This document shows, piece by piece, positions 31,283-47,139 of a stretch of DNA of 64,000 bases. A program made the translations under genes and the position numbers. Source of the stretch: Pocillopora damicornis (Eukaryota). The stretch lies in NCBI RefSeq assembly GCF_003704095.1, contig NW_020847607.1:248001-312000 (forward strand), in the 5' to 3' direction. How positions within the stretch are numbered: the first letter of the stretch is position 1; every line of letters starts with the position of its first letter. The notes below the pieces were generated by a model. It was not told where the DNA came from. It saw only the letters and a list, made by a program, of their open reading frames with translations, and did no database searches.

Positions 31283-34049
31283 ACAAGAGTAAAAAAATAA
31301 TGCAATGTGAAGCATCCTTAGGGAGCAGCGAGTCAGTAAGGTGAGTATCAGGAATACATTCACCTGTAAAAGAGTCAGGAAACTCAGAGTTTTAAACACT
31401 GTGGATCAGAGTTTGTGTACAAGGCAGCAAATGGATACAATACAGTGAACAAACAAAAATCAAGCCAAAGATCTTCGCCATTCAGCCAGCAAATGGGTAC
31501 TGTGTGCTGTTCGTTGTTTGATCAATTTGTCCTCTTCAACATATTTTAAGACCATCACGACATATTTAGTAATCAGTGGTTAACACCCCTATTAATTTTT
31601 TAAGTAAGCATTTTGGTGGTACTGGTACATTTTAATTCAAACAAGAACACGGCATCAACACTAAAACTACTGGTAACTAGAACTTTAGGTAATTAAGAAA
31701 GCTGAACAAAGTTATTGGGCTTTATTTCTTTTTCTACTTCTCCTTGCAAACAGGTTCTTATTTTAAAGACTGGTGTACCATACTTTTAAACTGTTATTTA
31801 CTAGCCGTATGTAGATACATTTATTTTATTAACTGAAGGTGCAATATTTATCCATCATTGATTGTGACGATCTCACTGATCTTTATCCTAGTGATGTGAA
31901 TTTGCTATGATATCAATATTAAGGGAAAGGGAAAACTTAAATTGGTCATTTTGTTACCAGGATAATTACCTGGTATGTTGAAGTTTGTTGATTATGCTAT
32001 TTATACAGGGTTGTCAAAAGATTCCTAGCAATTGGTGCCTTTCAACGCCTACTGAAAAGCATGCCGGCTGTCGTGAATGCTTGTGGCACAAGTTTCAGCA
32101 TTGAAGCATGACCTTGTGTGGCCTCTTTTGAATCCCAAACTCATTACTCAAATTCTTTTTTGACAATCCTGTTACATGAGTGTTACATTAGTGGATGGAG
32201 TATTCTACAGATGTGTCCTCTCCGTTCAGTTGAACCATTTCCTATTTATCCAAAATCAGTAATAGCAGGTTGCGCTTGATACTAGAGCAGTAATTTTCAA
32301 AATGGATGCAGAGAAATTAATTTTGTTGGTGTCCGTGAAGAGGAAGCCTCTGACTAGAGAGAAACTCTATTGTTCTGATAATCCCCCAAGTACCTCTAGT
32401 AACACAATTAGTCTCCTCAGGCTCGGTTATTATAGTCAATTAGTCGCCATGGTCTTGTCTGAGGGATTAATTTGACAATATTTGTCTCTTCTGGGGCAGA
32501 GAATTGGCCTATGGCCATCTTTGAATATTTGTGAATCGTCTCAAGTGTGTGATAAATTAAGTGAAAGCTAACATGTGATTAGGTACTTAATCTGCATGTT
32601 GTCTTAAAGAAGATTGAGAAAGGAAACTTTACCATTCCGTATCTTCATGTCCATGTAAAACCATTTTTTCTTGTTTTCAGTATCCTACAGAGAAAAGTAC
32701 GTTGATAGATGATCTGAATTGGACAATTTTAAAATTCTGTTCTCCTGATCCTTCAGTCACTTGGACAGTTTCCCAGATACTTCAAAGCAATGATAAATTA
32801 TTACTGAACTATTAATTATCAACTAAGCATTCATTTTGCGTAAAATAATCCAGCGTGTTAATCAATACATCTCAAAATAAAATACTTTTCGCAATATCTC
32901 CATGTTCAAACCCAAATGTGCTGGCATAATAATTAATTCCTTTGCTAAAAGATTGACCATTTTATCTTTTAAGGGGGTGGGGAAGGGGATGAAAGTATCA
33001 TCAAAAAATTACTCTCCTGGAAAAGAAAATCAAAGAAAACATTTGTCTCACAAAACTGCTAAAAACAGCAACATTTATTATAATTTTGCCCCTCCATAAC
33101 TAAAATGGTTCAAAGTCCTCAATGTCTAATATATTGTCCATTGTCAAAGAAAACAATTGTGACTGTATCTATATCAAGGTAATATTCTCTAGTTATTTGT
33201 TACACCAAGGCTGAAAAAATTTAAATGTGAACGGGAAAGAATATGGTCTTTCCTATTTCAGAGATATGTACCCAATAATAATCAAAGTTGTACAGAAAAG
33301 ACAACAATCTCTTGTTACTGTAAATAGTTTTAAGTATTTTTACTACGCATTTATCATATTGTTGTTATATTCTACAATTCGATGTCTTACGATTCGCATT
33401 TATCGCGGTCTGTAAATAGAGTTCTTCTGATACAGCTCGGTAAGAGCTCCTGAATTAACGAAGCTTTTATCCAGGTCCCGCACTTGCCCAAGGCAAGAGA
33501 GGGCCCTGGGTACGGCAATGAATAAAACCATATCATCAGTTTGAAAATAAGAAAAGGTTGAACTATTAAACTTGGAAACGTCTATGTAGTTATACATGTG
33601 TGCTGTGATCTGTTATCCTTATAACGGAAACGAACCTTGCGAGTGCGTTACATGTATAAGGAGATGGAACAAACTCTTTCGGAGTGATTTGTTATAGGAA
33701 ACGTTTCCTGGCGACGCGCGTGTTTTTTACGCGCCACTCACTCCACTCTGCCTGTCTCGTTCGGTGCGCGCCTCATTATTGACCACCTTCTTGGTTGTAT
33801 GCATGTGTGATCAAAGCCTTCAAAGATTCCATGTTATCTGTAATGAACTCTCGCATACTTTGATAGAGGCCCGCGAAATCCCCGTGCAGCGGCTGCGCCA
33901 ACGAGCGCCTGCGCTTAAGCCCTGCTAAGAAAAGTTTATCGTTTCTTCTTCTATTATGGTTGGAATGCGTTCATATTAAAAGCTGTACCTTTCTTACTCC
34001 GCTATGATCGTAAACGTGACCGAAGAAAGTTTACAAAATGCAATTGGAG

Positions 34050-34263
34050 TTTACCCCTTCAGCCTTAACATCAGTATCCATATTCTCAATACTCTTCCCT
34101 ATAAATTCCTGTTGGTGATAACAAGGAGAATATGTGTAACAATCAAAGCCTCGTAGGTTGTCTGTAATTCCCTTTCTTCTCATGATTTTTATAGGTGATT
34201 AAGCAGAATTACTGTAAGGAGAAATAAGATGCTGGTCACTCTTAGGACTCTTAGAAGGGTTAA
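34050..34263. mobile_element. TTAA-MITE family copy
   Basis: Degenerate tttacccctt start, aagggttaa end; body similar to 8053-8265. Confidence 0.6.
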
Positions 34264-34752
34264 TTAGTCCTCTCTAAGCATCTCTCTCTTTGCCCGCGTG
34301 TACTGATTTGATTTACGAGAACCCGCATCACAGGTCGAATTCAAGCTGGCGTCGCCAGCCATAGAAGTAAGGGAGGCAGGGAATTAAGGTGACAAAGAGT
34401 GTGTTATTGTTACCTTTTTGTTTTTTAATTCTTATATTTTAAGCGTACAAAGGCTAAACAGCGATCAGTTTACAGTTACTCAAAAAATATCATAAATCAA
34501 TACAATACTGCATCGCCCGAATAAGAATTAAACCAAAAGAGAAGACAACTAAAGCAAATCGGCATCTTATATTCCCATTTTTTCTTAATCGGGCGTTAGA
34601 CTCAACAGCTCTTGCTGGGTGTCGACAAATATCTGTGACGTGCGTTTATCTTTCGATCGTTTGTGCGAAACAGACCAAACCGGCAGGCTACATGTAATTT
34701 ACGGAAAAGCTGACGAAATGGACAATGGTTGCAATGCTAAAGGTGACAAAGA

Positions 34753-36743
34753 CTAATTAGCTACTTTTACATTGATCTCGCACAAGCCAAGTGGTACATT
34801 ACAGACAAGTTGAACTGAATAAATCTCCTTCACTTTCACATCATGGCAAGTGTTGGAGAGCATTTGGTAGACTGTTGTCTCGTGCTGTCTAGCGACGCAG
34901 TCGGCATCTCCAACTTGTGTTAACTGGCCCATTTTTCGTTTGCTTACAGCTTCTTGTGAGGAAGAAACTAGCTTTGGATAAGTCTTGCGGAAAACCTCTA
35001 CGGCATCTCTCGCCTCTCCGACTGAAGCGGTTTCCTTTGAAATGATAATTTCGTCAATTTTCCTGTTGTTGTAAGTAGTTTTCAAAGTGAAACCTTGCGA
35101 CAGCAGTGGGTTTTTGGAACGCATTGCGTAAAGCTTGTATTTGGAGACCTTTGACATACGCTTATCCCTGATTGTGACAGTAAAAGACTCTTGGAAGAAC
35201 TGTTCCTCATCTCTGTAAGCTTATGAGAAGAAGAAAAGAACAGCAAATTGATAAATCGATCCAGTTTTTCTACAATTCTGTTCAGTTCTAGATGACTCAG
35301 AAGAAGTTTTAATGCGATAACGACAGAAAAAGTGGCAACCGAGCCGAAGGCGAGGAAGTTACTAATATCCGTTGTTATTTGTGCTACAATTACAACTGAA
35401 ATTTACTCACTTGAATCCTTAAATTGTATCTCAATGGGCCAGTGATCACTCACTTTCTTCGCCTGCAGAAAACAGTAATGCAGTATGTTAATTAACAGCA
35501 ACATTGCTTAACATTCTTGATTTATGAACCTCACTTTTGACCAAGACTCCGCGCAATGTGTAATCGAGTGCACCGAATAATTTCAAGGAATGATTTTGGA
35601 TGATGTTTTACTAAATATGTAGCAGTCTCCTCTCAACAGATGTCTACCGATGTCAGCAAACACTATGAAGACGACTTAAACACAAAATTGACTCAATGAA
35701 CTTACTATGGAAAATCACCTAACCTTGTCGACAGATCGAAACTTCTTGAGTCAACCAATACAGCAGTTTTCAATTGCGTGTCGAAACAACAAAACCAAAG
35801 TAATCACGACTGACAATCAGGAAAAAGGTTAAAGTCATCATCAACCAATGCGAACTCTAACTAAAAACAGGTAACTTGCTTGAAGCGCGCAAAAACGCGG
35901 GTGACCAAGTTGAGATTGGTTTTAGCTCTGCGTTTGATTGGTCGAGATAATAGCGCGCGTTTTCTGGCGACAGACAACAGTCCTTCTCTACACGATCAAA
36001 CAACAGGATGGAAACTTCAAGAGAAGCGGAACGCTGGAAAACCTTAACAAAATCCTTCATCTGAGGACAACCCGATGCAGACCTTTCTACGCTGGTTTGG
36101 TAAACATTTTTAACTTATGGAGTCATCTATAACTCCATCAAAACCTCTTATCGTTGCATAAGAATAATGTACCTCATCTTGACTCAGTCCATAAGCATCT
36201 TTGTAATTAAACACATAGGCGCTGTCTGGAAAGATTCCTCTGGTCATGTTATACCCGGCAACTACCATCCTTTAAAATACAAACAATAAGGGTTAAAACC
36301 ATGATATTACACGCTATAGTACCTGAAAGATGATAGTATTTCGTTTTCTTTGATAGGTTTTGCGTTCAGGCGAGTTTTCGACGTGAAACCTTGCGCGAAT
36401 GACACTTTCTTCCAGGGACAAAGAAAGAAATTTTGGGCTCCTATGAGGAATCCAACCTCAGACCTTTGGATTCCGTGATCTGACGCTCTACTTGTGAGCC
36501 ACAGACTCTCTGTATAGGATACTTTGACTCTATCAGCTGAATTTAATTTGGCCATGATAAAGAGGTTCTGAATCTGACGTTTCGAACGTTAGCCCGTCGT
36601 GAGAGTGCTCTGACGAAGGATAAACGCTCGAACGGTGAGCTTTAGAAACTCTATACGGTAGCAATGCACATTATCAACTCAGTTAGTTGTGTCTTTACCA
36701 AATTTACCTGTCATACGGGCAATCGGACTTCGCAACTGTAGTG
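34753..36743 (-). CDS. DNASE1: DNase I family, copy A, 3' part (end of exon 6 and exons 7-9) with a ~155-aa C-terminal extension
   Basis: 36743-36708 (TTVAKSDCPYDR, cut by gap), 36269-36173 (MVVAGYNMTRGIFPDSAYVFNYKDAYGLSQDE), 35462-35411 (AKKVSDHWPIEIQFKDS), 35219-34753 (terminal exon; the frame requires the AAG acceptor). Confidence 0.85.
36415..36510 (-). mobile_element. tRNA-SINE fragment
   Basis: Reverse match to the 60744-60864 SINE head; absent from the equivalent intron of DNase copy B. Confidence 0.6.
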
Positions 36744-39446
36744 NNNNNNNNNNNNNNNNNNNNNNNNNNNNNNNNNNNNNNNNNNNNNNNNNNNNNNNNN
36801 NNNNNNNNNNNNNNNNNNNNNNNNNNNNNNNNNNNNNNNNNNNCTCAAGAACTTTACTTACACATGGTAAGAGAGTTATGGGCCGGTAGTTTTCCTTAGA
36901 AAGAAAGATGCTTTTCGTCTTGTCGCAAATGCCACAGAAAGACTCTAGAACTTAAAATTTTCCATGGGCAATCCGCATCTCCCGTGGAACATGAGACTGC
37001 CGAGGACTTGAAAACTAGCTGCCTGCCATTCTAACGACATGTACCGACATTCTAATGACATGTTTGTCTTTCGTAAGTTTTGGTTCTCGCCATCAGAGTT
37101 GAATTTTGGGATGGCAAGCGTATGCAGCCGGGTTACTGAGTTGTCTTGAAAGTGGCGGTATTTTAAGCTGAACGTTCAGCACACTTCCCTTGACTGTAAC
37201 ATGGGCACATACTTTCTCACCATTTATTAGAGTGATGTAATCTCGTTCCCAAGGTCCTCTCTTCCTCCCTCGAGAAAGTAGAGTACTTTTTCGAGGGAGA
37301 AAGAAGGAGGATCCTGGGAACTAGGTTGAAAGTGAGGTTTCTCTGCCACATCGCGTGACTCTTAAGTGCGGCGTCCAACGAGCTCAGATCCTACAAAACA
37401 TTTCTGACGTGTCTCGCTGTTTTATGTCTCCATGAAATTTGTTCATTAAGATTCCCTCTGACTTCCAAAAAAATATGCAGTTTTCATGACATGGAGGTTA
37501 AAACTTGATTGACAACATGTCTCTAGCATGTTTTAACGCTCTATTAACTTTTGCTGTTTACCAAGGAAATAATTAATTTTAGTCATTAAATCGAGTGGTT
37601 TGCTATCGTAAAATGTGATTTCTTACTTTTCAAGAGATTGAGCACCTTAAGGTAGAAGTTGCCAATACATTTCAGAACCAAAAAAAAGGTTATTCAGCCA
37701 CGATTCTAGTTATTCAGAGCAATTACAAGCTGAGGTGTGTGAATGACCTCTGATATGTATATGAAAGTAAACCGTATGCTGCTTTTAATCCACAAAATTG
37801 TTTCCAGCCCATTTATGGGTTGATTGAAGCTGTGTCCACTTACATACAGTCAATCGAAAATAGCCCAAGGCTTTTATTTGCTTAAGCATATTACGAATAC
37901 TTTCTGGCAGTTAGGCCATTTTCACAGAAACAGTGTACATCACAAGTCGTTGCCACAAGCCACGCTGCATGTGAGTATTATTCTCAGTTTCCTTGTTATC
38001 AGATATTGCTCTCAATTTTTTGCAGCAGACTTGTGGTACCAACGTATCATCGTAGTTCTATTTTTAAGTTTGAACATAGTCGTGTTTTAAACAATGCACA
38101 CACAACGCTTTGTTTTTGCCGCAGACTGAATCCTGATCAAGTTTACTCGAAACTTTGTGCATGTTTTATAATTTACATATATCATTCGGTCATCTAACCG
38201 AAGGAAACATGTTTTCTTCTAAAACTTCAAACCTCTTTTCACATTTTTTATCTCATTGTAACATTCCTTGGAGAAATCTCAGTTAAACCTAGCTGTTAAT
38301 TCACTTTGAAAATGACTGTCTAGCCCAGACATGTTTTAATCACATATTCCAGTGGTTAGGATACCAAGCAGACTCAAAATGATAGATTCCTTTGTGAGCA
38401 GCAATTTAACAAAGGTCACTCCCTTTTCAAAAAGTTTATTATCATAAATCTGTACGTGATCAGGGCGGTTATATCACATCAGTGCCACAGATATCAGAGG
38501 TAAGTATTAAAATGAGAAACTAGAAGTCTTCTTCCTCTATTTATAGGACCGAAATCCTTCTGATTCCGACTGCGCAAGGTAGGAATTAAAATCAATTGAA
38601 TTTACCGTGGAAACCCTTAAGTCACGAACTTTCATGGTCTCTTTCGAAAAACCATTCTCGAAATTGCCACAAAAGTGCGGAAAATGTGTAGCAGTATATA
38701 ACTGAATTATCTCTTTGTCGGTTGCGGTATTGGTGTTGGTCGAGTCGGGATAAGTACTCATGAATGAATTCTTCCACACAGTTTACATCGTTACTCTGTT
38801 TGCGCGCAGTTGCAATGAGTAAAACTGTTCTTGTGTGGAGCATATGAATGTCCATAGTCGAAAATTATTGAAATCCTGTCTTCTTTTCGGTGTGTAGATG
38901 GTTTTGCGCTTGTTTTGAACAACGGCTCTTGTAATACGCGCACCATGAATAACCAATTCGTTATACTAATGTCCGTGTATTTGAATACCAGTCGCGGTTG
39001 AGGGCGTTGAGTTGACTCCTAGCGTGTTCAAGGCTCCTCCACTCTTTGCATACAATTGGACTGTAAGATGTAACAAGCGTTTTGCTGTAATTTTTGTAGG
39101 AGGTAGTTTGCAGAATAATCCAGATATTAATTCTCAAGCCTGATCGTTCGGACGTAAGTAAAAATAAGAAGAATTACATTCTCACCCAGACGATCAAGCC
39201 GCCCGCTAAACCTTTGCTGCAAGATTGAAATCGCGTGCTCTTAAACTCAGATATTTAGAAATATATTTTGCTTCCCTCGCCTTAAGAGAGCCATTGAAAC
39301 TTCGACAGAAGAGGACGTTCGCCGTAGCTTTAATTTCCGGTTGAAAGGAGACGGACAAAAAGGCTTCATATCCTACGTGTTTCTGGTCAGTTCACATTAC
39401 AGTTACGCCCTTCTCAGCTTGTTGATATACTTCACTTCGCCTGAAG

Positions 39447-39452
39447 TATAAA
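39447..39452 (+). promoter_or_regulatory. TATA box of DNase copy A
   Basis: TATAAA 64 nt upstream of the ATG, conserved in copy B (47198-47203, minus). Confidence 0.55.
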
Positions 39453-39510
39453 CCTGTATTTGTATATTGCCAGATCGTTAGAAAGGAGTGTTGCTACTAA
39501 ATCTGCAAGA

Positions 39511-41076
39511 ATGGGCAAACTACTTTGGTTAATATCTTGCCTTATGGCCATCGGATTTTATGCAGAGTTATGGTGAGTGTGCAATGAGTATGTATATTGT
39601 TTTACAATTAAGCTTTCTGCATATGCAACTTTAATTTATGTGGCTGACTGCGCCCGTGGGCAAGATGAAGCGAATCCTGTGTTCTGACTGGCTCACCAAA
39701 CGGGCAAGATGGGCCCAATCTTGCCTACTCGTGATTGCCCGCTTCGATTCCGCGCGCTTGCAGTCTACTTACAGAGTTCGCAATTTTCGGATGACAGCAA
39801 GGGAGTCGCAAAAGTAACAGAACACACTCAAAATAAAGGAAACATTAAACGAGTTCCTGAGTTAACTGTGCTACAAAAACCAGCTTTCTTTGCCTGCACT
39901 CAAAAATAAAGAAAGTCATTCTTGATTTGTTTACAGCGCAATTTTTTGCATCATAATAAAATCCTTTACTGAACACTCACTCCCCGTATTTCAAATGGTT
40001 TAACCCAAGATCATGAAAAGAACCTGAGCTCCGACTAGTTTGGCCAAAATATTCTGATTTTTTACTCCTCAAAGGGCCAGACGTAATTTTTGATTATATG
40101 CACGAAATTAATGAAATAATAAAAATGCTCATTTCTCCTTTTTGTTATGTCTATGCTCTAGTGAAACATCTCCAGTTGACACGATTGAAGGAGCAGCTCT
40201 GAAGATTGCAACATTTAACGTCCAAATATTTGGGTACAGAAAAATGGCAAATCATTTGGTCAGAGACATATTAGTCAAGGTATTTTTCACTATTAGTGAA
40301 AAAGAGCTCGACTGTACTTAATATCTTGAGCCGATGTCTGTTTCCTGAGACGTTCACCTAAAGGGTGCCTCGATCCTATGTTCACTGTGCGGACGTCTGT
40401 TGAAGACCTAGAGGATCAATATCAGTATCTGGGCAACTGCCCACCTACCCCTCCCCTAACCCAACATTAACCCTAACTTGTTATCAATTGATTGTTGTTG
40501 AGTTAGGGAAGGGGTAGGTGGGCAGTTGCCCAGATACTGATATTGATCCGATGTAAGATTTGTCCTAAGTGTAATAACATTTGGTCCTAAATGTAGTAAA
40601 GTCCTAAATGTAGTAACATTTAGTCTTAAATGTAATAATCCTCCAATGCAATCGTTTAACTCCGCCAGTGCATTGTTGTTATACCGGACATCCATATTGA
40701 GATGTTAAAGAGGATTCCTTGGTGCAACAGGCTTATCACATTTAGGACCAAATGTTATTACATTTAAGACAGTTATTACATTTAGGACAGTTCTTACATT
40801 TAGGACTTCCACAGACGTCTGTGTAAATAGACTTCCGCTCGCCTCGAGAACAGAAGATCACTGAAGTGGAACTTCCACATCCAGCCAACGCCAGGAGAAT
40901 TTCTTCTCCATCACCTCGTTCGCTTTTGATGAGCGTAAATATATATATATATATGAATCTTTCGTTGACGTTTGATGTTTTTTGCAGGTGGTTTTGAGGT
41001 ATGATATCATACTGATTCAAGAAATTCGTTCAAAGAACGAGGGACCAATAAACGAGCTGTTGGCGGATGTCAACAA
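39511..41076 (+). CDS. DNASE1: DNase I family, copy A, 5' part (exons 1-3) on a probably mis-oriented contig
   Basis: 39511-39572 (MGKLLWLISCLMAIGFYAEL), 40162-40279 (LKIATFNVQIFGYRKMAN), 40988-41076 (LRYDIILIQEIR); GT-AG, phases 2,0,2; truncated by the gap at 41441. Confidence 0.88.
40397..40814. mobile_element. MITE with TIRs built from gtcctaaatgtaataa repeats
   Basis: Ends ctgttgaagaccta / taggacttccacag; flanked by duplicated (g)acgt(c); empty site present in copy B near 45483-45500. Confidence 0.8.
40413..40549. mobile_element. Palindromic MITE nested in the previous element
   Basis: About 48-bp near-perfect TIRs ggatcaatatcagtatctgggcaactgcccacctacccc; GA on both flanks. Confidence 0.85.
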
Positions 41077-41540
41077 GTAATGAATTAACTCATTAACTTT
41101 ATTTTACTCGTCAAGTAATATTTATCGACAATCTAAAGGGAACCTTCATCTTTTCACCTGCCTTCTCGTCAGGTAACTTATTCCAGTTATATGCTCAAGC
41201 TGCACCAGAGTCACCAGAGTTTTTCTTCACTTTTTCCTTCCCTCTTCCTATTCCCCCCCCCTCCTTTCTCTACCTTCTACCTAAGAGTATTCCTATTCCT
41301 GGATAGGATGCTAGCTCATCGCAGGGTGACCCCCAGGATACCGACTGCATCCCACACATACTCAGGCAAAATGCAAAATTTGAGCGTTTTTAAGATGCAT
41401 TTGTAAAGTAACTTTTATCTCAGTTTTCATATGTACTATCNNNNNNNNNNNNNNNNNNNNNNNNNNNNNNNNNNNNNNNNNNNNNNNNNNNNNNNNNNNN
41501 NNNNNNNNNNNNNNNNNNNNNNNNNNNNNNNNNNNNNNNN

Positions 41541-43042
41541 CTTGGAAGAACTGTTCCTCATCTCTGTAAGCTTATGAGAAGAAGAAAAGAACAGAAAATT
41601 GACAAATCGATCCACAATTCGTTTCAGTTATAGATGACATAGACAACGTTTAAATGCGATAACGGCAGAAAGGTGGCAACCAAGCCGAAGGCGAGGAAGT
41701 GACCAATATCCGTTGTTATTTGTTCTACAATTACAACTGAAAATTGACTCACTTGAATCCTTAAATTGTATCTCAATGGGCCAGTGATCACTCACTTTCT
41801 CCGCCTGTAGAAAACAGTAATGCAGTATGTTAATTAACAGTAACATTGCTGAACATCATCAATTCATGAACCACACTGTGCGCAATGTTTAATCGAGAAT
41901 AACGACTACTTTCAGGGGATGACTTTGGATGTCGGTTTTTAATTATGTAGCAATCTCCTCTCAACAGATGTCTACAGATATCAGCAAACACCATGAAGAC
42001 GACTTAAACACGACATTGACTCAACGAACTTACTATGGAAAATCGCCTAACGTTATCGACAGATCGAAACTTCTTGTAACCAATACAGCAGTTTTCAATT
42101 GCGTTTCGAAACAACAACTAACTATCAGGAGAAAGGTTAAAGTCATCATTAACCAGTGAGAACTCGGTGTAAAAACAGGAAACTTGCTTGAAGCGCGGGA
42201 AAACGAGGGTGACCAAGTTGATATTGGTTTTAATTTTGCGTTTGATTGGTCGAGATGGTGGTGCGAGTTTTCTGGACCAATCACAGAGCGAGGTGAAGCA
42301 AACCCAAACCAATCCCAGATTAGTTTCGATATTCGATTAAAAAATTGCCAATCAGCTACAAAAACCAGTCTTATGACGCAGTTAAACTCTGGTAGCGAAA
42401 ATTTCATTGCTATACTCTTGTAATATTTTTCGTTTAGGTTGACGTCAAGGTGTCAGTCACTTTAACAGACAACAGTTCTTTTCAAGACTACTCTCGCCCG
42501 AACGATCAGACTACGCGATCAAACAGAGAAGCATTTTGCTCTTCAAGAAGAAGAACAAAATCCTTCATTTAAGGAGAACCCGATGCAGACCTTTCTACGC
42601 TGATTTGGTAAACATTTTTAACTTATGGAGTCATCTATAACTCCATCAAAACCTCTTATCGTTGCATAAGAATAATGTACCTCATCTTGACTCAATCCAT
42701 AAGCATCTTTGTAATTAAACACATAGGCGCTGTCTGGAAAGATTCCTCTGATCATATTATACCCGGCAACTACCATTCTATAAAAAACAAATAGCTATAG
42801 GGTCATAACGACGATATTAAATGCTCTTGTACCTCAGAGATGATTATATTTCGTTTACTCTCTGTATAGGATACTTTGACTTTATCAATTGAGTTATAAA
42901 TTCAAAAAAATCTGACGTCTTGAGCATTAGCCCGTTGTGAGAGTGCTCTGACTAAGGATAAACGCTCGAACAGTGAGCTTTAGAAACTCTATACGGTGGT
43001 CAATGCACATTATCAACTCAGTTGATATATGTTGTTAATCAC

Positions 43043-43079
<37 letters not shown>

Positions 43080-46000
43080 CCACCGAGGCAACACCACATT
43101 TTCTTTACAAACATACCACCATTACACTTTGCTTTAATTTTGCAGAACAAAATCTTTGATCTTTTGCGTTCAGTTTTTTAAGATCTTGATCACCTATTTT
43201 TCATTGACTTTATCATTGCCATTATCGTTTACATTATTATCATATTATCTTTATTTTTATTAGTAATGTCTTTACCAAATTTACCTGTCATACGGGCAAT
43301 CGGACTTCGCAACTGTAGTGNNNNNNNNNNNNNNNNNNNNNNNNNNNNNNNNNNNNNNNNNNNNNNNNNNNNNNNNNNNNNNNNNNNNNNNNNNNNNNNN
43401 NNNNNNNNNNNNNNNNNNNNGTCTTTACCAAATTTACCTGTCATACGGGCAATCGGACTTCGCAACTGTAGTGTCCATCAGATCAGAAAAGAGCCAATAG
43501 AATCGCTTGTCCGTTGCTAGCCTTATTTTACGCCACTCTGACCTGGTTACATAGCTACAGCCGGCGTTATAGTCGCCTAAAATCATAACGTCTCTCAATT
43601 GCCATCTTTGCACAATGTCGTCATAAACGTCGACCAAATGGTCGATTTCCAACTCTGCAGCCTTTGGTGAAGTATGTATGGCAGCCATAGCAAAGTCTGA
43701 CACATCTTAATAAAGAAAAAGGCAATTCTTCATCAAAATGATCTCAGCTGTGACACCGTCTGACTTTCCCCCCTTTTACATAACGAACATGCATAACATT
43801 GTGTTCTGAAAACGGACCTCCCAAAAATATCGACTGCGCACACTCGGACGAAAGTACGCTGGAGAGTCCGCTGGAAAGAATCAAACCTGTTTTATTCTTC
43901 TCACATATAACACTAGTCGCGCGCACCGTTCCTTTATCACTCGCCAATAAGCAAGAGTCCTCGCGTGACAAACGATTCACAAAAATAATGTAACTTACAT
44001 GCTCCTTTGGCTTGGAAATGGACAACAAAAGGTTCTCTTTGAAATGTGTCTTGGTTGTCGTGATACAAATAGCTGTCCGTAACAGTTACCTTGTCACTCC
44101 TGGCAGTCAAAAAGACAACTTGATATTGGTCTTTTATCATATACTTCCATTTTCAAATATCAAACCGTTTTTGAATCAAACAACCTGAGTCCGGTAAGGG
44201 GCAGTCAAATCATAAAAAAGTCGCTCAGGCGATCTCGGTCTGAAGGGCTTGGTTCTAGTTTAATACTGAGGGGGCTTCTCTTCTACACTGACAATTGTCA
44301 TATATTAATAACGCGCTGATAACATATATTTAGATTTAAGATCGGTGATATCGTTTTTGCTGTTGCCTAGTCACGACCACGCCCCTTCCCCTTCTCCTCC
44401 CCCCTCTTGCTCAATAAACTTGAAAGGTATCAAAAGAAACATTTTCATGGGGTCTAAACCAAAAGCATTCTGTCTGATTTAAGCACCATCCTTCACAACA
44501 CCTACTAACTCAAAGGAGAATCAAAGTGTTCCTTACAAATCGGCTTTGAGCTAGTGTTAACATAGAAGACGGATTAGTATAGTTTATGTAACATAGCTCA
44601 CCTGTATAAGAATGCATACTGCTCCTTGCTGGCTGTGCGACCAAGCCTGACACTCAACGCCATCTTATAGACGCCGGGGGGAGATGAAACCCTGACACAG
44701 GGCAAAAGAGAAACAAAGACTCTTAACTAGCTCTTCGCATTTGCTTTATAAAATACGTAACTGATCTGGAATGAATTAAGGATAGTACATATGAAAACTG
44801 AGATAAAAGTTACTTTACAAATGCATCTTAAAANNNNNNNNNNNNNNNNNNNNNNNNNNNNNNNNNNNNNNNNNNNNNNNNNNNNNNNNNNNNNNNNNNN
44901 NNNNNNNNNNNNNNNNNNNNNNNNNNNNNNNNNGATAGTACATATGAAAACTGAGATAAAAGTTACTTTACAAATGCATCTTAAAAAATGCTCAAAGTTT
45001 GCCTTTTGCCTGAGCATGTGTGGGACAGGAATGGGAGTACTCTTAGGTAGAAAGTAGGGAAGAGTGGGGGCAGGGGAGGGGGGGAGAATGAAGGAAAAAG
45101 TGAAGAAAAACTCTGGTGACTCTGGTGCAGCTTGAGCACATAACTGGAATAAGTTACCTAAGGAGAAGGTAGGTGAGAAGATGAGGGGTCCCTCTAGATT
45201 GTCGATAAATATTACTTGACGACTAAAATGAAGTTATTAAGTTAATTCATTACCTGTTGACATCCGCGAACAGCAAGTTTATCGGTCGATCTCTTTTTGA
45301 ACGAATTTCTTGGATCAATATGATATCATACCTTAAAATCACCTGCAAAAAACATCAAACGTCAACGAAAGATTCATATATATTTACGCTCATCAAAAGC
45401 GAACGAGGCGATAGAGAGGAAACTCTCCTGGCATTGGCTGGATGTGGAAGTTCCACATCAGTGATCTTTTGTTCGGAGGTCAATTTACACAGACGTCCGC
45501 ACTGTGAATATCGGACCGAGGCACCTTTGAGGTGAGCGTCTTAACAAACAGACATCGGCTCAAGATGTCCCCCTCTCTCAGGCTGTCAGCTGTCAAACTC
45601 CCGAATTTCTTTCCTCTCAATCACTGTTATTTTAATTTTCACCTCTACTTAGCGGTCGCGGTGACCTTTTACTAAGTCTCAACGGCATTTAGTTATGGTC
45701 CTCAACTTATATTGAACGGTCATAGAAAGCGGCCCACTCTGATGAAACTCAGAATAATATTTCAAGGATTTTTTGTTCATCTTTCTCTGCCAAAATCAAA
45801 GTGTGTAGTATTTGCGAGCGAGATTTTGTACATGAAGCGGCTAGTTATGGTATTAAATGGAGTTTTTTTTTAGTCTTTTATAATGCCCCTTGAACGGTAG
45901 GACCTGTATTAAGCAGTAGGTATGTGGTTGACCGTGAGTAATCGTATTTGGCCCATATGAGAGACATAAAAAAGATTCTTCTCGGAATTTAGACTTGGAT

Positions 46001-47139
46001 CGCAAAAGAGACAATAAAATTTTTGCATGTATATAGGAAGCCAGTGTAAGAGTTGGGCCCATTTTTTCCTACCAAAACGAGACAGCAATTGAAGTTTTGA
46101 GCAAGGACCTTCTTCACTATAAATAGTTCTATTTTATCATTCTTTTTATAAATATGACGGTTTTTAAATAATCACCTCCCCTGAAAAAAAAACAAATAAA
46201 CAAACAAACAAAAAGAAACACACACACACACACACGTTAGCCGCTACGCCCCGCAGCCCTTGATCGAGAAAAATATGGCGTTTTAAGGCATGAGCTATAA
46301 GCCTCCATCTGTGACTTCCAGTTCCATTATTGAACCCTTTTTAATGCACTAACATCGAAAAATACCTTGACTAATATTTCTCTGACCAAAGTATTTGCCA
46401 TTTTCTTTGACCCAAATATTTGGACGTTAAATGTTGCAATCTTCAGAGCTGCTCCTTCAATCCTGTCAACTGAAGATGTTTTACTAGAGCATAGACATGA
46501 AAAAAAAGAGAAATGAGCATTTTTATCATTCCATCAACTTTGTGCACATAATCAATACCTACATCTGGCCCTTTGAGGGGTAAAAAAAACAGAATATTTT
46601 AGCCATACTAGTTAGAGCTCAGGTACTTTTCATGATCTTGGGATGAACCATTTAAGACAAGGGAGGTGAGTGTTCAGTGAAGGATTTTTTATAAAGCAAG
46701 AAGATTTTGCTGTAAACGAATTAAAAATGACTTGTTTATTTTTGAGGACTGGAAAAGAAAGCTGGATTTTGTAGTACAGTAAACTCAGGAAACTCATTTT
46801 ATGTCTCCTTTATTTTGAGTGTGTTCTGTCACTTTACGACTCCCTTGCCTTCATTGTCCGAAAATTACGAACTTTGTAAGTAGACTCCACGCGCGCGGAA
46901 TCAAAGCGGGCAATCCCGAACAAGCAAGATGGCTCCGCCCGCCCGCCCGCTTGGTGAGGTAGTCAGAACACAGGATTCACTTCATCCTGCCCACGGGCGC
47001 TGCCAGCTACATAAATTAAAATTGTACATGCTGAAAGCTCAGTTGCAAAACAATATTCATACTCATTGCACACTCACCATAATTCTGCATAAAATCCGAC
47101 GGCCATGAGGCAAGATATTAGCCAAAAGAGTTTGCTCAT
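41541..47139 (-). CDS. DNASE1: DNase I family, copy B, exons 1-8 complete, exon 9 truncated by gap
   Basis: Exons 47139-47078, 46483-46366, 45342-45254, 44691-44602 (LGRTASKEQYAFLYR), 44099-43999 (DTFQREPF), 43705-43438 (IHTSP..GDYNAGCSY..DTT..CPYDR), 42777-42681, 41804-41753 (SDHWP), 41570-gap. Equivalents of catalytic E39, E78, H134, D168, N170, D212, H252 and the C173-C209 pair are present; all phases are compatible. Confidence 0.92.
43044..43077. repeat. poly(C) tract
   Basis: About 34 consecutive C. Confidence 0.9.

What the first reader, a model, noticed from the sequence alone, without database searches (positions are those of the whole stretch)
34753..35219. DNase I fused to an unrecognised ~155-aa C-terminal domain
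Seen: after the SDHWPIEIQF terminal strand the gene splices (phase 1) into one large exon: TYRDEEQFFQESFTVTIRDKRMSKVSKYKLYAMRSK...YSVQLVCNVPLGLCEINVKVAN, with a basic patch, alternating strand/helix patterns and four Cys. The start of the exon is also present in copy B. Established: vertebrate DNase I proteins end here or add short tails (basic tail of DNASE1L3, GPI signal of DNASE1L1). Inference: a folded accessory domain of unknown function, e.g. targeting to chromatin, membranes, mucus or microbes. Best candidate here for an undescribed protein architecture.
Basis: partly seen in the sequence, partly recalled or inferred. Interest (0 to 1): 0.8.

Follow-up and report, generated by a model that had tools for sequence, protein, structure and literature searches.

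The report
Coral DNase I with orphan C-terminal domain
A coral DNase I gene really is spliced onto a conserved exon that adds a roughly 155-residue folded domain of unknown function; stony corals and a sea anemone share it, and it matches no described protein family or solved structure.

Summary
On the minus strand, the last DNase I strand exon (35462-35411, ...SDHWPIEIQFKDS) is joined in phase 1 to a terminal exon (35219-34756, stop 34755-34753). RNA contigs from four independent studies carry exactly the junction 35411/35219 (GT..AG). No contig covers the intron.

The 155-aa tail is a conserved domain. A profile search of 1.84 billion proteins found only about 12 clusters. These include predicted full-length 'deoxyribonuclease-1(-like)' proteins of five Acropora species (462 aa) and of Nematostella (405/448 aa). 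In all five foreign genomic loci with at least about 600 bases of upstream sequence, the domain exon follows a DNase I exon, and the acceptor sits at the same position.

The architecture already sits unremarked in RefSeq predictions, but I found no description of the domain. Its function is inferred only: most likely an accessory targeting or binding module of a secreted nuclease.

I rate it a new variant of a known kind, of moderate interest.

The parts
34753..35219 (-). Terminal coding exon of DNase I copy A. It is phase 1, has 154 full codons (YRDEEQFF...EINVKVAN) and a TAA stop at 34755-34753. This exon encodes the orphan C-terminal domain.
   Evidence: open frame. (RNA contigs of 4 studies end the intron exactly at 35219). 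(homologues). (AF2 model, pLDDT 81).
34404..34752 (-). 3' untranslated region. RNA contigs run on to about 34605 (X1) or about 34404 (X14). The poly(A) site was not determined.
   Evidence: table 8 (records 3 and 12).
35220..35410 (-). Last intron (191 nt, GT..AG). If it were read through, the frame would stop after three codons (KDS-SE*).
   Evidence: joint in 4 runs; zero depth inside the intron..
35411..35462 (-). Penultimate exon (52 nt), AKKVSDHWPIEIQFKDS. It encodes the last beta-strand of the DNase I core, with the catalytic Asp-His.
   Evidence: (joints on both sides).
36173..36269 (-). Exon encoding (R)MVVAGYNMTRGIFPDSAYVFNYKDAYGLSQDE of the DNase I core.
   Evidence: (joints 35462/36173 and 36269/36708).
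36708..36743 (-). The 3' end of the large DNase I exon of copy A (TTVAKSDCPYD-R). It abuts the N run 36744-36843, and the rest of that exon is not in the window's letters.
40163..41077 (+). Exons 1 and 2 of copy A (about 40163-40282 and 40982-41077). They lie on the opposite strand because scaffold piece 36844-41440, between two 100-N gaps, is inverted relative to a long-read contig of a close relative.
   Evidence: blastn: window 41440-36900 matches L004 15501-10938 reversed. (tblastn).
41541..46494 (-). Tandem paralogue, copy B. DNase I exons lie at about 46494-46363, 45348-45253, 44693-44601, 44134-44003, 43703-43437, 42779-42681 and about 41804-41753. The first 30 nt of its own domain exon (41570-41541) follow, before an N run.
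   Evidence: (exon 43703-43437 against bovine DNase I, E 2e-27).

Best explanation
This is the constitutive last exon of a DNase I gene of a stony coral. The genome is probably Pocillopora damicornis; that is inferred from assembly size and style, not shown.

Shown: the exon is spliced in frame behind the final strand of an intact DNase I catalytic core. It encodes a roughly 155-residue domain. The fusion is present in robust and complex stony corals and in a sea anemone, so it predates their split (at least Hexacorallia). The domain is found only behind DNase I.

Predicted: a compact alpha+beta module with the order beta - alpha alpha - beta beta - alpha alpha - Cys loop - beta beta. The last hairpin is pinned by a conserved Cys...Cys pair. 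A second Cys pair closes a variable loop that Nematostella and one other lineage lack. Homologues with a complete N-terminus carry signal peptides, so the protein is secreted.

Inferred: the domain is a non-catalytic accessory module that binds something other than the scissile DNA backbone. Candidates are the substrate in its natural packaging, or a matrix or surface such as mucus, prey or microbes. It would hold or aim the nuclease in sea water. This is the role that the basic tail, the GPI signal and the SMB domain play for vertebrate DNase1 paralogues. What the domain binds is unknown.
For: Splicing: joints 35219/35411, 35462/36173 and 36269/36708 occur in RNA contigs of four studies, and no contig lies in the last intron.

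Coding constraint: homologues run from 88% down to 22% identity, with invariant A69, P81 and C139 and near-invariant Y49, L83, Q88, L137 and C146. Conservation starts exactly at the acceptor, and the acceptor position and phase are the same in six other loci.

Obligate fusion:
- Full-length proteins P0008 (Acropora, 462 aa), P0050 (474 aa), P0037 (437 aa, from an unbroken transcript-like contig) and P0018/P0034 (Nematostella) all carry it.
- Genomic loci L005, L011, L012, L013 and L015 all have the SDHW/YPIE exon, or the whole DNase I gene, just upstream.
- The profile hits only this locus in the window's own genome.

Intact enzyme: the exon at 43703-43437 matches bovine and human DNase I at E 2e-27. 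PF03372 covers the N-terminal part of the homologues. The motifs SKEQY, IHTSP, GDYNAG, PYDR and SDHWP are present.

Fold: AF2 with 19 sequences gives pLDDT 81.1 and pTM 0.74, and all five models score 77.6-81.1.

Secretion: P0008, P0050 and P0034 have signal-peptide-like N-termini, and the domain has 4 conserved Cys.

Precedent for C-terminal add-ons specialising DNase1 paralogues: PMC9208542.
Against: Nothing here shows binding of any ligand.

- Net charge of the domain varies from -2 to +9 among homologues, so simple electrostatic DNA binding is not a conserved property.
- The structure searches give no functional analogue.
- The two-chain prediction of the DNase core with the domain gave no verdict, so the domain's relation to the active site is unknown.
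- The initiator Met and signal peptide of the window's own gene were not located.
- Contigs cannot exclude a minor isoform that retains the last intron and so lacks the domain.
Confidence: 0.6

Rival explanations
1. The domain is a pro-domain, an intramolecular chaperone or an autoinhibitor. It would cover or restrain the nuclease during synthesis and storage in secretory cells, and be cleaved or displaced on release.
For: Secreted nucleases are dangerous to the producing cell, so a built-in restraint is plausible. The first ~10 residues of the domain model as a low-confidence linker. The window's copies carry R-D-K-R near the start of the domain.
Against: The RDKR motif is not conserved; Acropora has NHDNH and other lineages have NKDGH or NNDDR. 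Canonical DNase I needs no pro-domain. The complex prediction gave no verdict either way.
Confidence: 0.15
2. The domain is an oligomerisation or stability module. It would, for example, dimerise the nuclease or protect it from proteases and sea-water conditions, without binding any target.
For: It is a compact disulfide-stabilised fold. The conserved residues are mostly hydrophobic or small (A69, P81, L83, L137, Cys), which fits a structural core.
Against: Conserved polar loop motifs (LRSxxxNPLLSxGF and PxLVSxSQ) look more like a functional surface than pure core. No test was made here.
Confidence: 0.15
3. It is not part of the DNase protein at all: a chance ORF, a 3'UTR, a separate gene, or an assembly artefact of a mis-scaffolded region.
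For: The locus is badly scaffolded. It has four 100-N gaps, one inverted piece and duplicated gap flanks. Gene callers on metagenomes report the exon as a stand-alone ORF.
Against: Spliced RNA contigs from four studies join it in frame to the DNase exons. An ungapped long-read contig of a close relative has two complete tandem genes, each ending in this exon. Full-length homologues exist in Acropora and Nematostella. The stand-alone ORFs are prokaryote-style calls that start inside the exon or in the intron.
Confidence: 0.02

Closest known systems
DNASE1L3 (DNase gamma) C-terminal domain
   Same: It is an extension placed directly after the last strand of a secreted DNase I core, and it changes which forms of DNA the enzyme can reach (PMC9381713 abstract; PMC9208542).
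   Different: The DNASE1L3 tail is a short, strongly basic peptide found in jawed vertebrates. The domain here is about 155 residues, is predicted to be a folded alpha+beta domain with two disulfides, has variable net charge (-2 to +9) and shows no sequence similarity.
DNase1L5 of fishes with a C-terminal somatomedin B (SMB, PF01033) domain
   Same: It is the only described case I found of a folded, cysteine-containing domain appended to the C-terminus of a DNase1-family enzyme (PMC9208542).
   Different: SMB is a known cysteine-rich Pfam domain shared with other protein families. The coral domain has no Pfam hit at all, is predicted as a compact alpha+beta fold, and occurs only behind DNase I.
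DNase1L1 GPI-anchor signal
   Same: It is a C-terminal addition that localises a DNase1 paralogue (PMC9208542).
   Different: The coral proteins have no hydrophobic C-terminal tail. They end ...EINVKVAN, or ...SLSTYRA in Acropora.
Bacterial secreted DNases fused to DNA-binding domains (e.g. Thioalkalivibrio DNase)
   Same: A nuclease plus an extra C-terminal domain. The abstract reports that such domains are potential activators of activity at high ionic strength (PMC4486849 abstract). That makes an attractive analogy for an enzyme working in sea water.
   Different: It is an unrelated nuclease with known DNA-binding folds. For the coral domain, no DNA-binding fold or conserved basic surface was detected. 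The analogy is an idea only.
RefSeq/GenBank predicted proteins 'deoxyribonuclease-1(-like)' of Acropora spp. (e.g. KAK2548008.1, XP_044173547.1) and Nematostella vectensis (XP_048586767.1)
   Same: They are orthologues or homologues with the same two-part architecture. They align along the whole domain (43-45% identity for Acropora, 24% for Nematostella).
   Different: They are named by the N-terminal domain only, and the C-terminal 130-160 residues carry no annotation. The Nematostella form lacks the internal Cys loop.

Membership tests
DNase I family (EEP superfamily, PF03372) | Sequence match of the catalytic core to DNase I. | tested here: met
   Window exon 43703-43437 against bovine and human DNase I: E 2.3e-27, chain residues 126-213. 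PF03372 covers the N-terminal part of homologues P0008, P0034 and P0037. tblastn places all core exons.
DNase I family (EEP superfamily, PF03372) | Catalytic and metal-binding residues (Glu in SKEQY, His in IHTSP, Asp/Asn in GDxN, Asp in YDR, Asp-His in SDHxP). The residue roles come from established knowledge of bovine DNase I. | tested here: met
   All five motifs are read in copy B of the window and in both copies of L004. For copy A, the window holds only PYDR and SDHWP; the rest lies outside its letters.
DNase I family (EEP superfamily, PF03372) | N-terminal signal peptide (secreted enzyme). | tested here: inconclusive
   There is no in-frame ATG upstream of LKIATFNV in either copy, so the first coding exon was not found. 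Homologues P0008, P0050 and P0034 have typical signal peptides.
DNASE1L3-type basic C-terminal peptide | A short, strongly basic C-terminal peptide. | tested here: not met
   The domain has 154 residues and models with 5 strands and 4 helices. Net charge is -2 to +9 across homologues.
DNase1L5-type SMB domain (PF01033) | A Pfam SMB match, a cysteine-rich stretch. | tested here: not met
   No Pfam hit up to E 10 for the window exon, and none on the C-terminal part of 9 homologues. There are only 4 Cys.
DNase1L1-type GPI signal | A hydrophobic C-terminal tail after an omega site. | tested here: not met
   The C-termini are polar. This was read by eye; no GPI predictor was run.
Any described domain family or solved fold | A significant profile, sequence or structure match for the C-terminal domain. 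| tested here: not met

The most novel reading that the evidence does not exclude
The domain is a new protein fold that arose in early anthozoans. It gives their secreted DNase I a specific target, for example DNA embedded in mucus or microbial biofilm matrix, prey chromatin, or extracellular-trap-like DNA. Alternatively, it lets the enzyme hold DNA at sea-water ionic strength. If so, it would be a second, independent solution to the problem that vertebrates solved with the DNASE1L3 tail. The faster divergence of the first 62 codons between the two tandem copies would then reflect different targets.
Probability: 0.3. Interest if true: 0.65.

Novelty: new variant of a known kind. Interest (0 to 1): 0.5.

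Why it matters
DNase1-family enzymes are specialised largely through what is attached to their C-terminus: a basic tail, a GPI anchor or an SMB domain. The survey of the family that I read covers vertebrates plus a few invertebrates and does not mention cnidarians (PMC9208542).

This is a fourth, much larger and structurally unassigned add-on. It is fixed in corals and a sea anemone, expressed in wild coral samples, and present in two diverging tandem copies.

It offers a concrete, testable handle on what extracellular DNA degradation does in corals, such as digestion, mucus and microbiome control, or immunity. It is also a candidate new domain family for Pfam/InterPro. If it confers salt-tolerant or matrix-targeted DNase activity, it could be of practical use.

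Tried and rejected
- **Pfam** on the exon and on nine homologues: only PF03372 on the N-terminal part. A further Pfam call on single window exons failed because one exon was under 20 residues and was not repeated.
- **PDB sequence and profile searches:** noise only.
- **ESM Atlas, twice:** unnamed bacterial clusters for the window exon. For P0012 it returned helical sensor domains (TarH, TorS) with low shared-feature counts. These are incompatible with the alpha+beta model and were taken as chance.
- **First AF2 run with 6 sequences:** unusable (pLDDT 54.7).
- **Complex prediction** of the Acropora DNase core against its own C-domain: 'no answer', which is evidence neither for nor against contact.
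- **Word searches** with the Acropora and Nematostella C-domains: only P0050 and the queries themselves.
- **Furin-type cleavage at RDKR:** rejected as a conserved feature.
- **Uniformly basic DNA-binding domain:** rejected.
- **Alternative acceptor 7 nt downstream:** not seen in RNA.
- **Paper searches** for a cnidarian DNase with this domain, or for its expression site: nothing.
- N runs were not filled.

Full report
**1. What is at the coordinates**

The minus strand of 35219-34753 is one open exon. It has a split first codon (A from the previous exon plus CT, giving Thr), then 154 codons (YRDEEQFF...EINVKVAN) and TAA. A polypyrimidine tract and AG lie immediately upstream.

The preceding 52-nt exon (35462-35411) encodes AKKVSDHWPIEIQFKDS, the last strand of a DNase I core, and ends before GTGAGT.

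**2. Is the junction real?**

I located public RNA runs that hold the exon. I then laid contigs of four runs from four different studies on window 34000-36743.

- Every run has a contig with the joint 35219/35411 (191 nt skipped, GT..AG on the minus strand).
- Every run also has the joints 35462/36173 and 36269/36708.
- The X1 contig matches the window with no mismatch.
- Bins inside the last intron have zero depth in all four runs.
- The second AG 7 nt downstream, which would give an out-of-frame 54-aa tail, is never used.
- Transcripts run on to about 34605-34404.

These are assembled contigs. They prove the spliced form exists but cannot exclude a rare intron-retaining form. Such a form would stop after three codons (KDS-SE*) and give a conventional tail-less DNase I.

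**3. The locus and its assembly**

The window carries two tandem DNase I genes on the minus strand.

- Copy B (46494 to 41541) has all core exons and the first 30 nt of its own domain exon, and then meets an N run.
- Copy A owns the exon under study. Upstream of 36743 the window shows an N run and then unrelated sequence.

A blastn comparison with L004 explains this. L004 is from a 1.46-Mb long-read contig in a Tara Pacific sample and is 98% identical to the window.

- Window piece 36844-41440, bounded by two 100-N gaps, is inverted relative to L004.
- That piece carries exons 1-2 of copy A on the plus strand.
- L004 itself holds two complete eight-exon genes, each ending in a full domain exon.

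I did not fill any N run, and I assert nothing about the letters inside them.

The genome has 234,350,878 bases in 4393 contigs. That size, together with HiRise-style scaffolding, fits the published Pocillopora damicornis assembly (234 Mb; PMC6208414). This identification is an inference.

**4. The enzyme part is an intact DNase I**

The large exon of copy B matches bovine and human DNase I at E 2e-27. The motifs that hold the catalytic Glu, His, Asp/Asn, Asp and Asp-His are all present.

I could not find the initiator Met. There is no in-frame ATG before LKIATFNV in either copy, so an upstream coding exon is likely. Homologues with complete N-termini (Acropora P0008, P0050, Nematostella P0034) have ordinary signal peptides.

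**5. The tail is a conserved domain found only behind DNase I**

The word search found close relatives and two relatives at 53-54% identity. All were prokaryote-style ORF calls on genomic contigs. Their similarity to the window begins exactly at the acceptor.

A profile search over 1.84 billion representatives gave only 14 hits at E of 0.001 or better. One is a repeat-protein false positive and one is a fragment.

Named members:
- 'Deoxyribonuclease-1' of Acropora cervicornis (KAK2548008.1, 462 aa).
- 'Deoxyribonuclease-1-like' of A. palmata, A. millepora, A. muricata and A. digitifera.
- 'Deoxyribonuclease-1' isoforms of Nematostella vectensis (405 and 448 aa).

P0037 (437 aa) comes from an unbroken transcript-like contig of a further species and reads straight from SDHWPIEIQFKDS into the domain.

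For the unnamed clusters I fetched the contigs.
- In L005, L011, L012, L013 and L015, the loci with at least about 600 nt of upstream sequence, a DNase I terminal-strand exon or the entire gene lies just upstream.
- L009, L014, L016 and L017 are too short to tell.
- The acceptor is at the same position and phase in all loci examined.

In the window's own genome the profile hits only this locus. The core exons are 68-81% identical to P0037, while the domain is 51% identical. The domain therefore evolves faster than the core but is clearly constrained.

**6. What the domain looks like**

- Pfam gives nothing for the exon or for the C-terminal part of nine homologues.
- PDB sequence and profile searches give only noise.
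- With six sequences AlphaFold2 failed (pLDDT 54.7).
- With 19 sequences it gave pLDDT 81.1 and pTM 0.74, with all five models at 77.6-81.1.

Predicted elements of the 19-sequence model:

| Element | Residues |
|---|---|
| Strand | 11-16 |
| Helix | 26-34 |
| Helix | 37-41 |
| Strand | 44-50 |
| Strand | 53-62 |
| Helix | 66-79 |
| Helix | 86-100 |
| Low-confidence loop | 103-127 |
| Strand | 131-140 |
| Strand | 145-153 |

C139 and C146 flank the last hairpin and are kept in nearly all homologues. C107 and C124 sit in the loop, which Nematostella and the P0016 lineage lack entirely. The pairing C107-C124 and C139-C146 is therefore likely; this is inference.

The most conserved stretches are LRSxxxNPLLSxGF and PxLVSxSQ.

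**7. How it most likely works**

Shown: a secreted-type DNase I with an intact active site always carries this domain in hexacorals and at least one sea anemone, and the domain is transcribed as part of the enzyme.

Inferred: it is a non-catalytic accessory module. The best-supported analogy is the way vertebrate paralogues are specialised by their C-termini, through the DNASE1L3 basic peptide, the DNase1L1 GPI signal and the DNase1L5 SMB domain (PMC9208542).

A second analogy is bacterial DNases whose extra DNA-binding domains are reported as potential activators at high ionic strength (PMC4486849 abstract). That is relevant for an enzyme working in sea water.

Against a simple DNA-clamp idea, the net charge of the domain ranges from -2 to +9.

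The rivals (pro-domain or autoinhibitor, oligomerisation or stability) cannot be excluded. The one complex prediction available gave no verdict.

Between the two tandem copies, the first 62 codons of the domain have dN 0.155 and dS 0.186. The rest has dN 0.039 and dS 0.083. The counts are small, but this fits relaxed or diversifying change in the N-terminal half, or gene conversion of the C-terminal half.

**8. Novelty**

The proteins already exist as automatic predictions named after their N-terminal domain. I found no paper describing the C-terminal domain or a cnidarian DNase I with it.

It is a new variant of a known kind: a DNase I with a lineage-specific, structurally unassigned accessory domain.

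Interest is moderate. The finding is solid and clean, and it opens direct experiments. Against that, lineage-restricted orphan domains on secreted enzymes are not rare, and the function is still a guess.

**9. Procedure notes**

The spliced protein of the window was not joined and sent to any search; exons were searched by reference. 

Noticed in passing
window 36844-41440 (between N runs 36744-36843 and 41441-41540): This scaffold piece is inverted relative to the long-read contig L004 of a close relative. As a result, exons 1-2 of DNase copy A read on the plus strand (about 40163-40282 and 40982-41077). It is probably a mis-oriented contig in a HiRise-type scaffold rather than a real inversion.
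   Followed up: partly
window N runs 43321-43420 and 44834-44933: The same few dozen bases stand on both sides of each 100-N gap. For example, TTVAKSDCPYDR and the following intron start are repeated. This looks like unmerged overlapping contig ends, so the gaps probably hide nothing. The letters were not filled.
   Followed up: no
window 46330-46540 (copy B) and 40132-40251 (copy A, plus strand): The first recognisable DNase exon has no in-frame ATG. A hydrophobic Met-started peptide (MLISLFF...) stands in the +1 frame in both copies. The true first coding exon, and so the signal peptide of this species' genes, was not located.
   Followed up: partly
window 35219-35034 versus L004:9908-10093: The two tandem paralogues differ mostly in the first 62 codons of the domain exon (dN 0.155 against 0.039 in the rest). 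This suggests either divergence of the N-terminal half or gene conversion of the C-terminal half.
   Followed up: partly
window 34000-34275: RNA contigs pile up here at depths in the hundreds to thousands, with many loose ends and inconsistent short skips. This is the signature of a short, highly repeated and transcribed element just downstream of the gene's 3' end.
   Followed up: no
window 36844-36951, minus strand: An open frame reading ...NYRPITLLPCVSKVLE, which looks like a reverse-transcriptase motif, runs into the N gap. It is probably a retroelement fragment next to the DNase gene.
   Followed up: no
window 35406-35410: If the last intron were retained, the frame would stop after three codons (KDS-SE*), giving a conventional tail-less DNase I. 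No such contig was seen in the four RNA runs, but contigs drop rare forms.
   Followed up: partly
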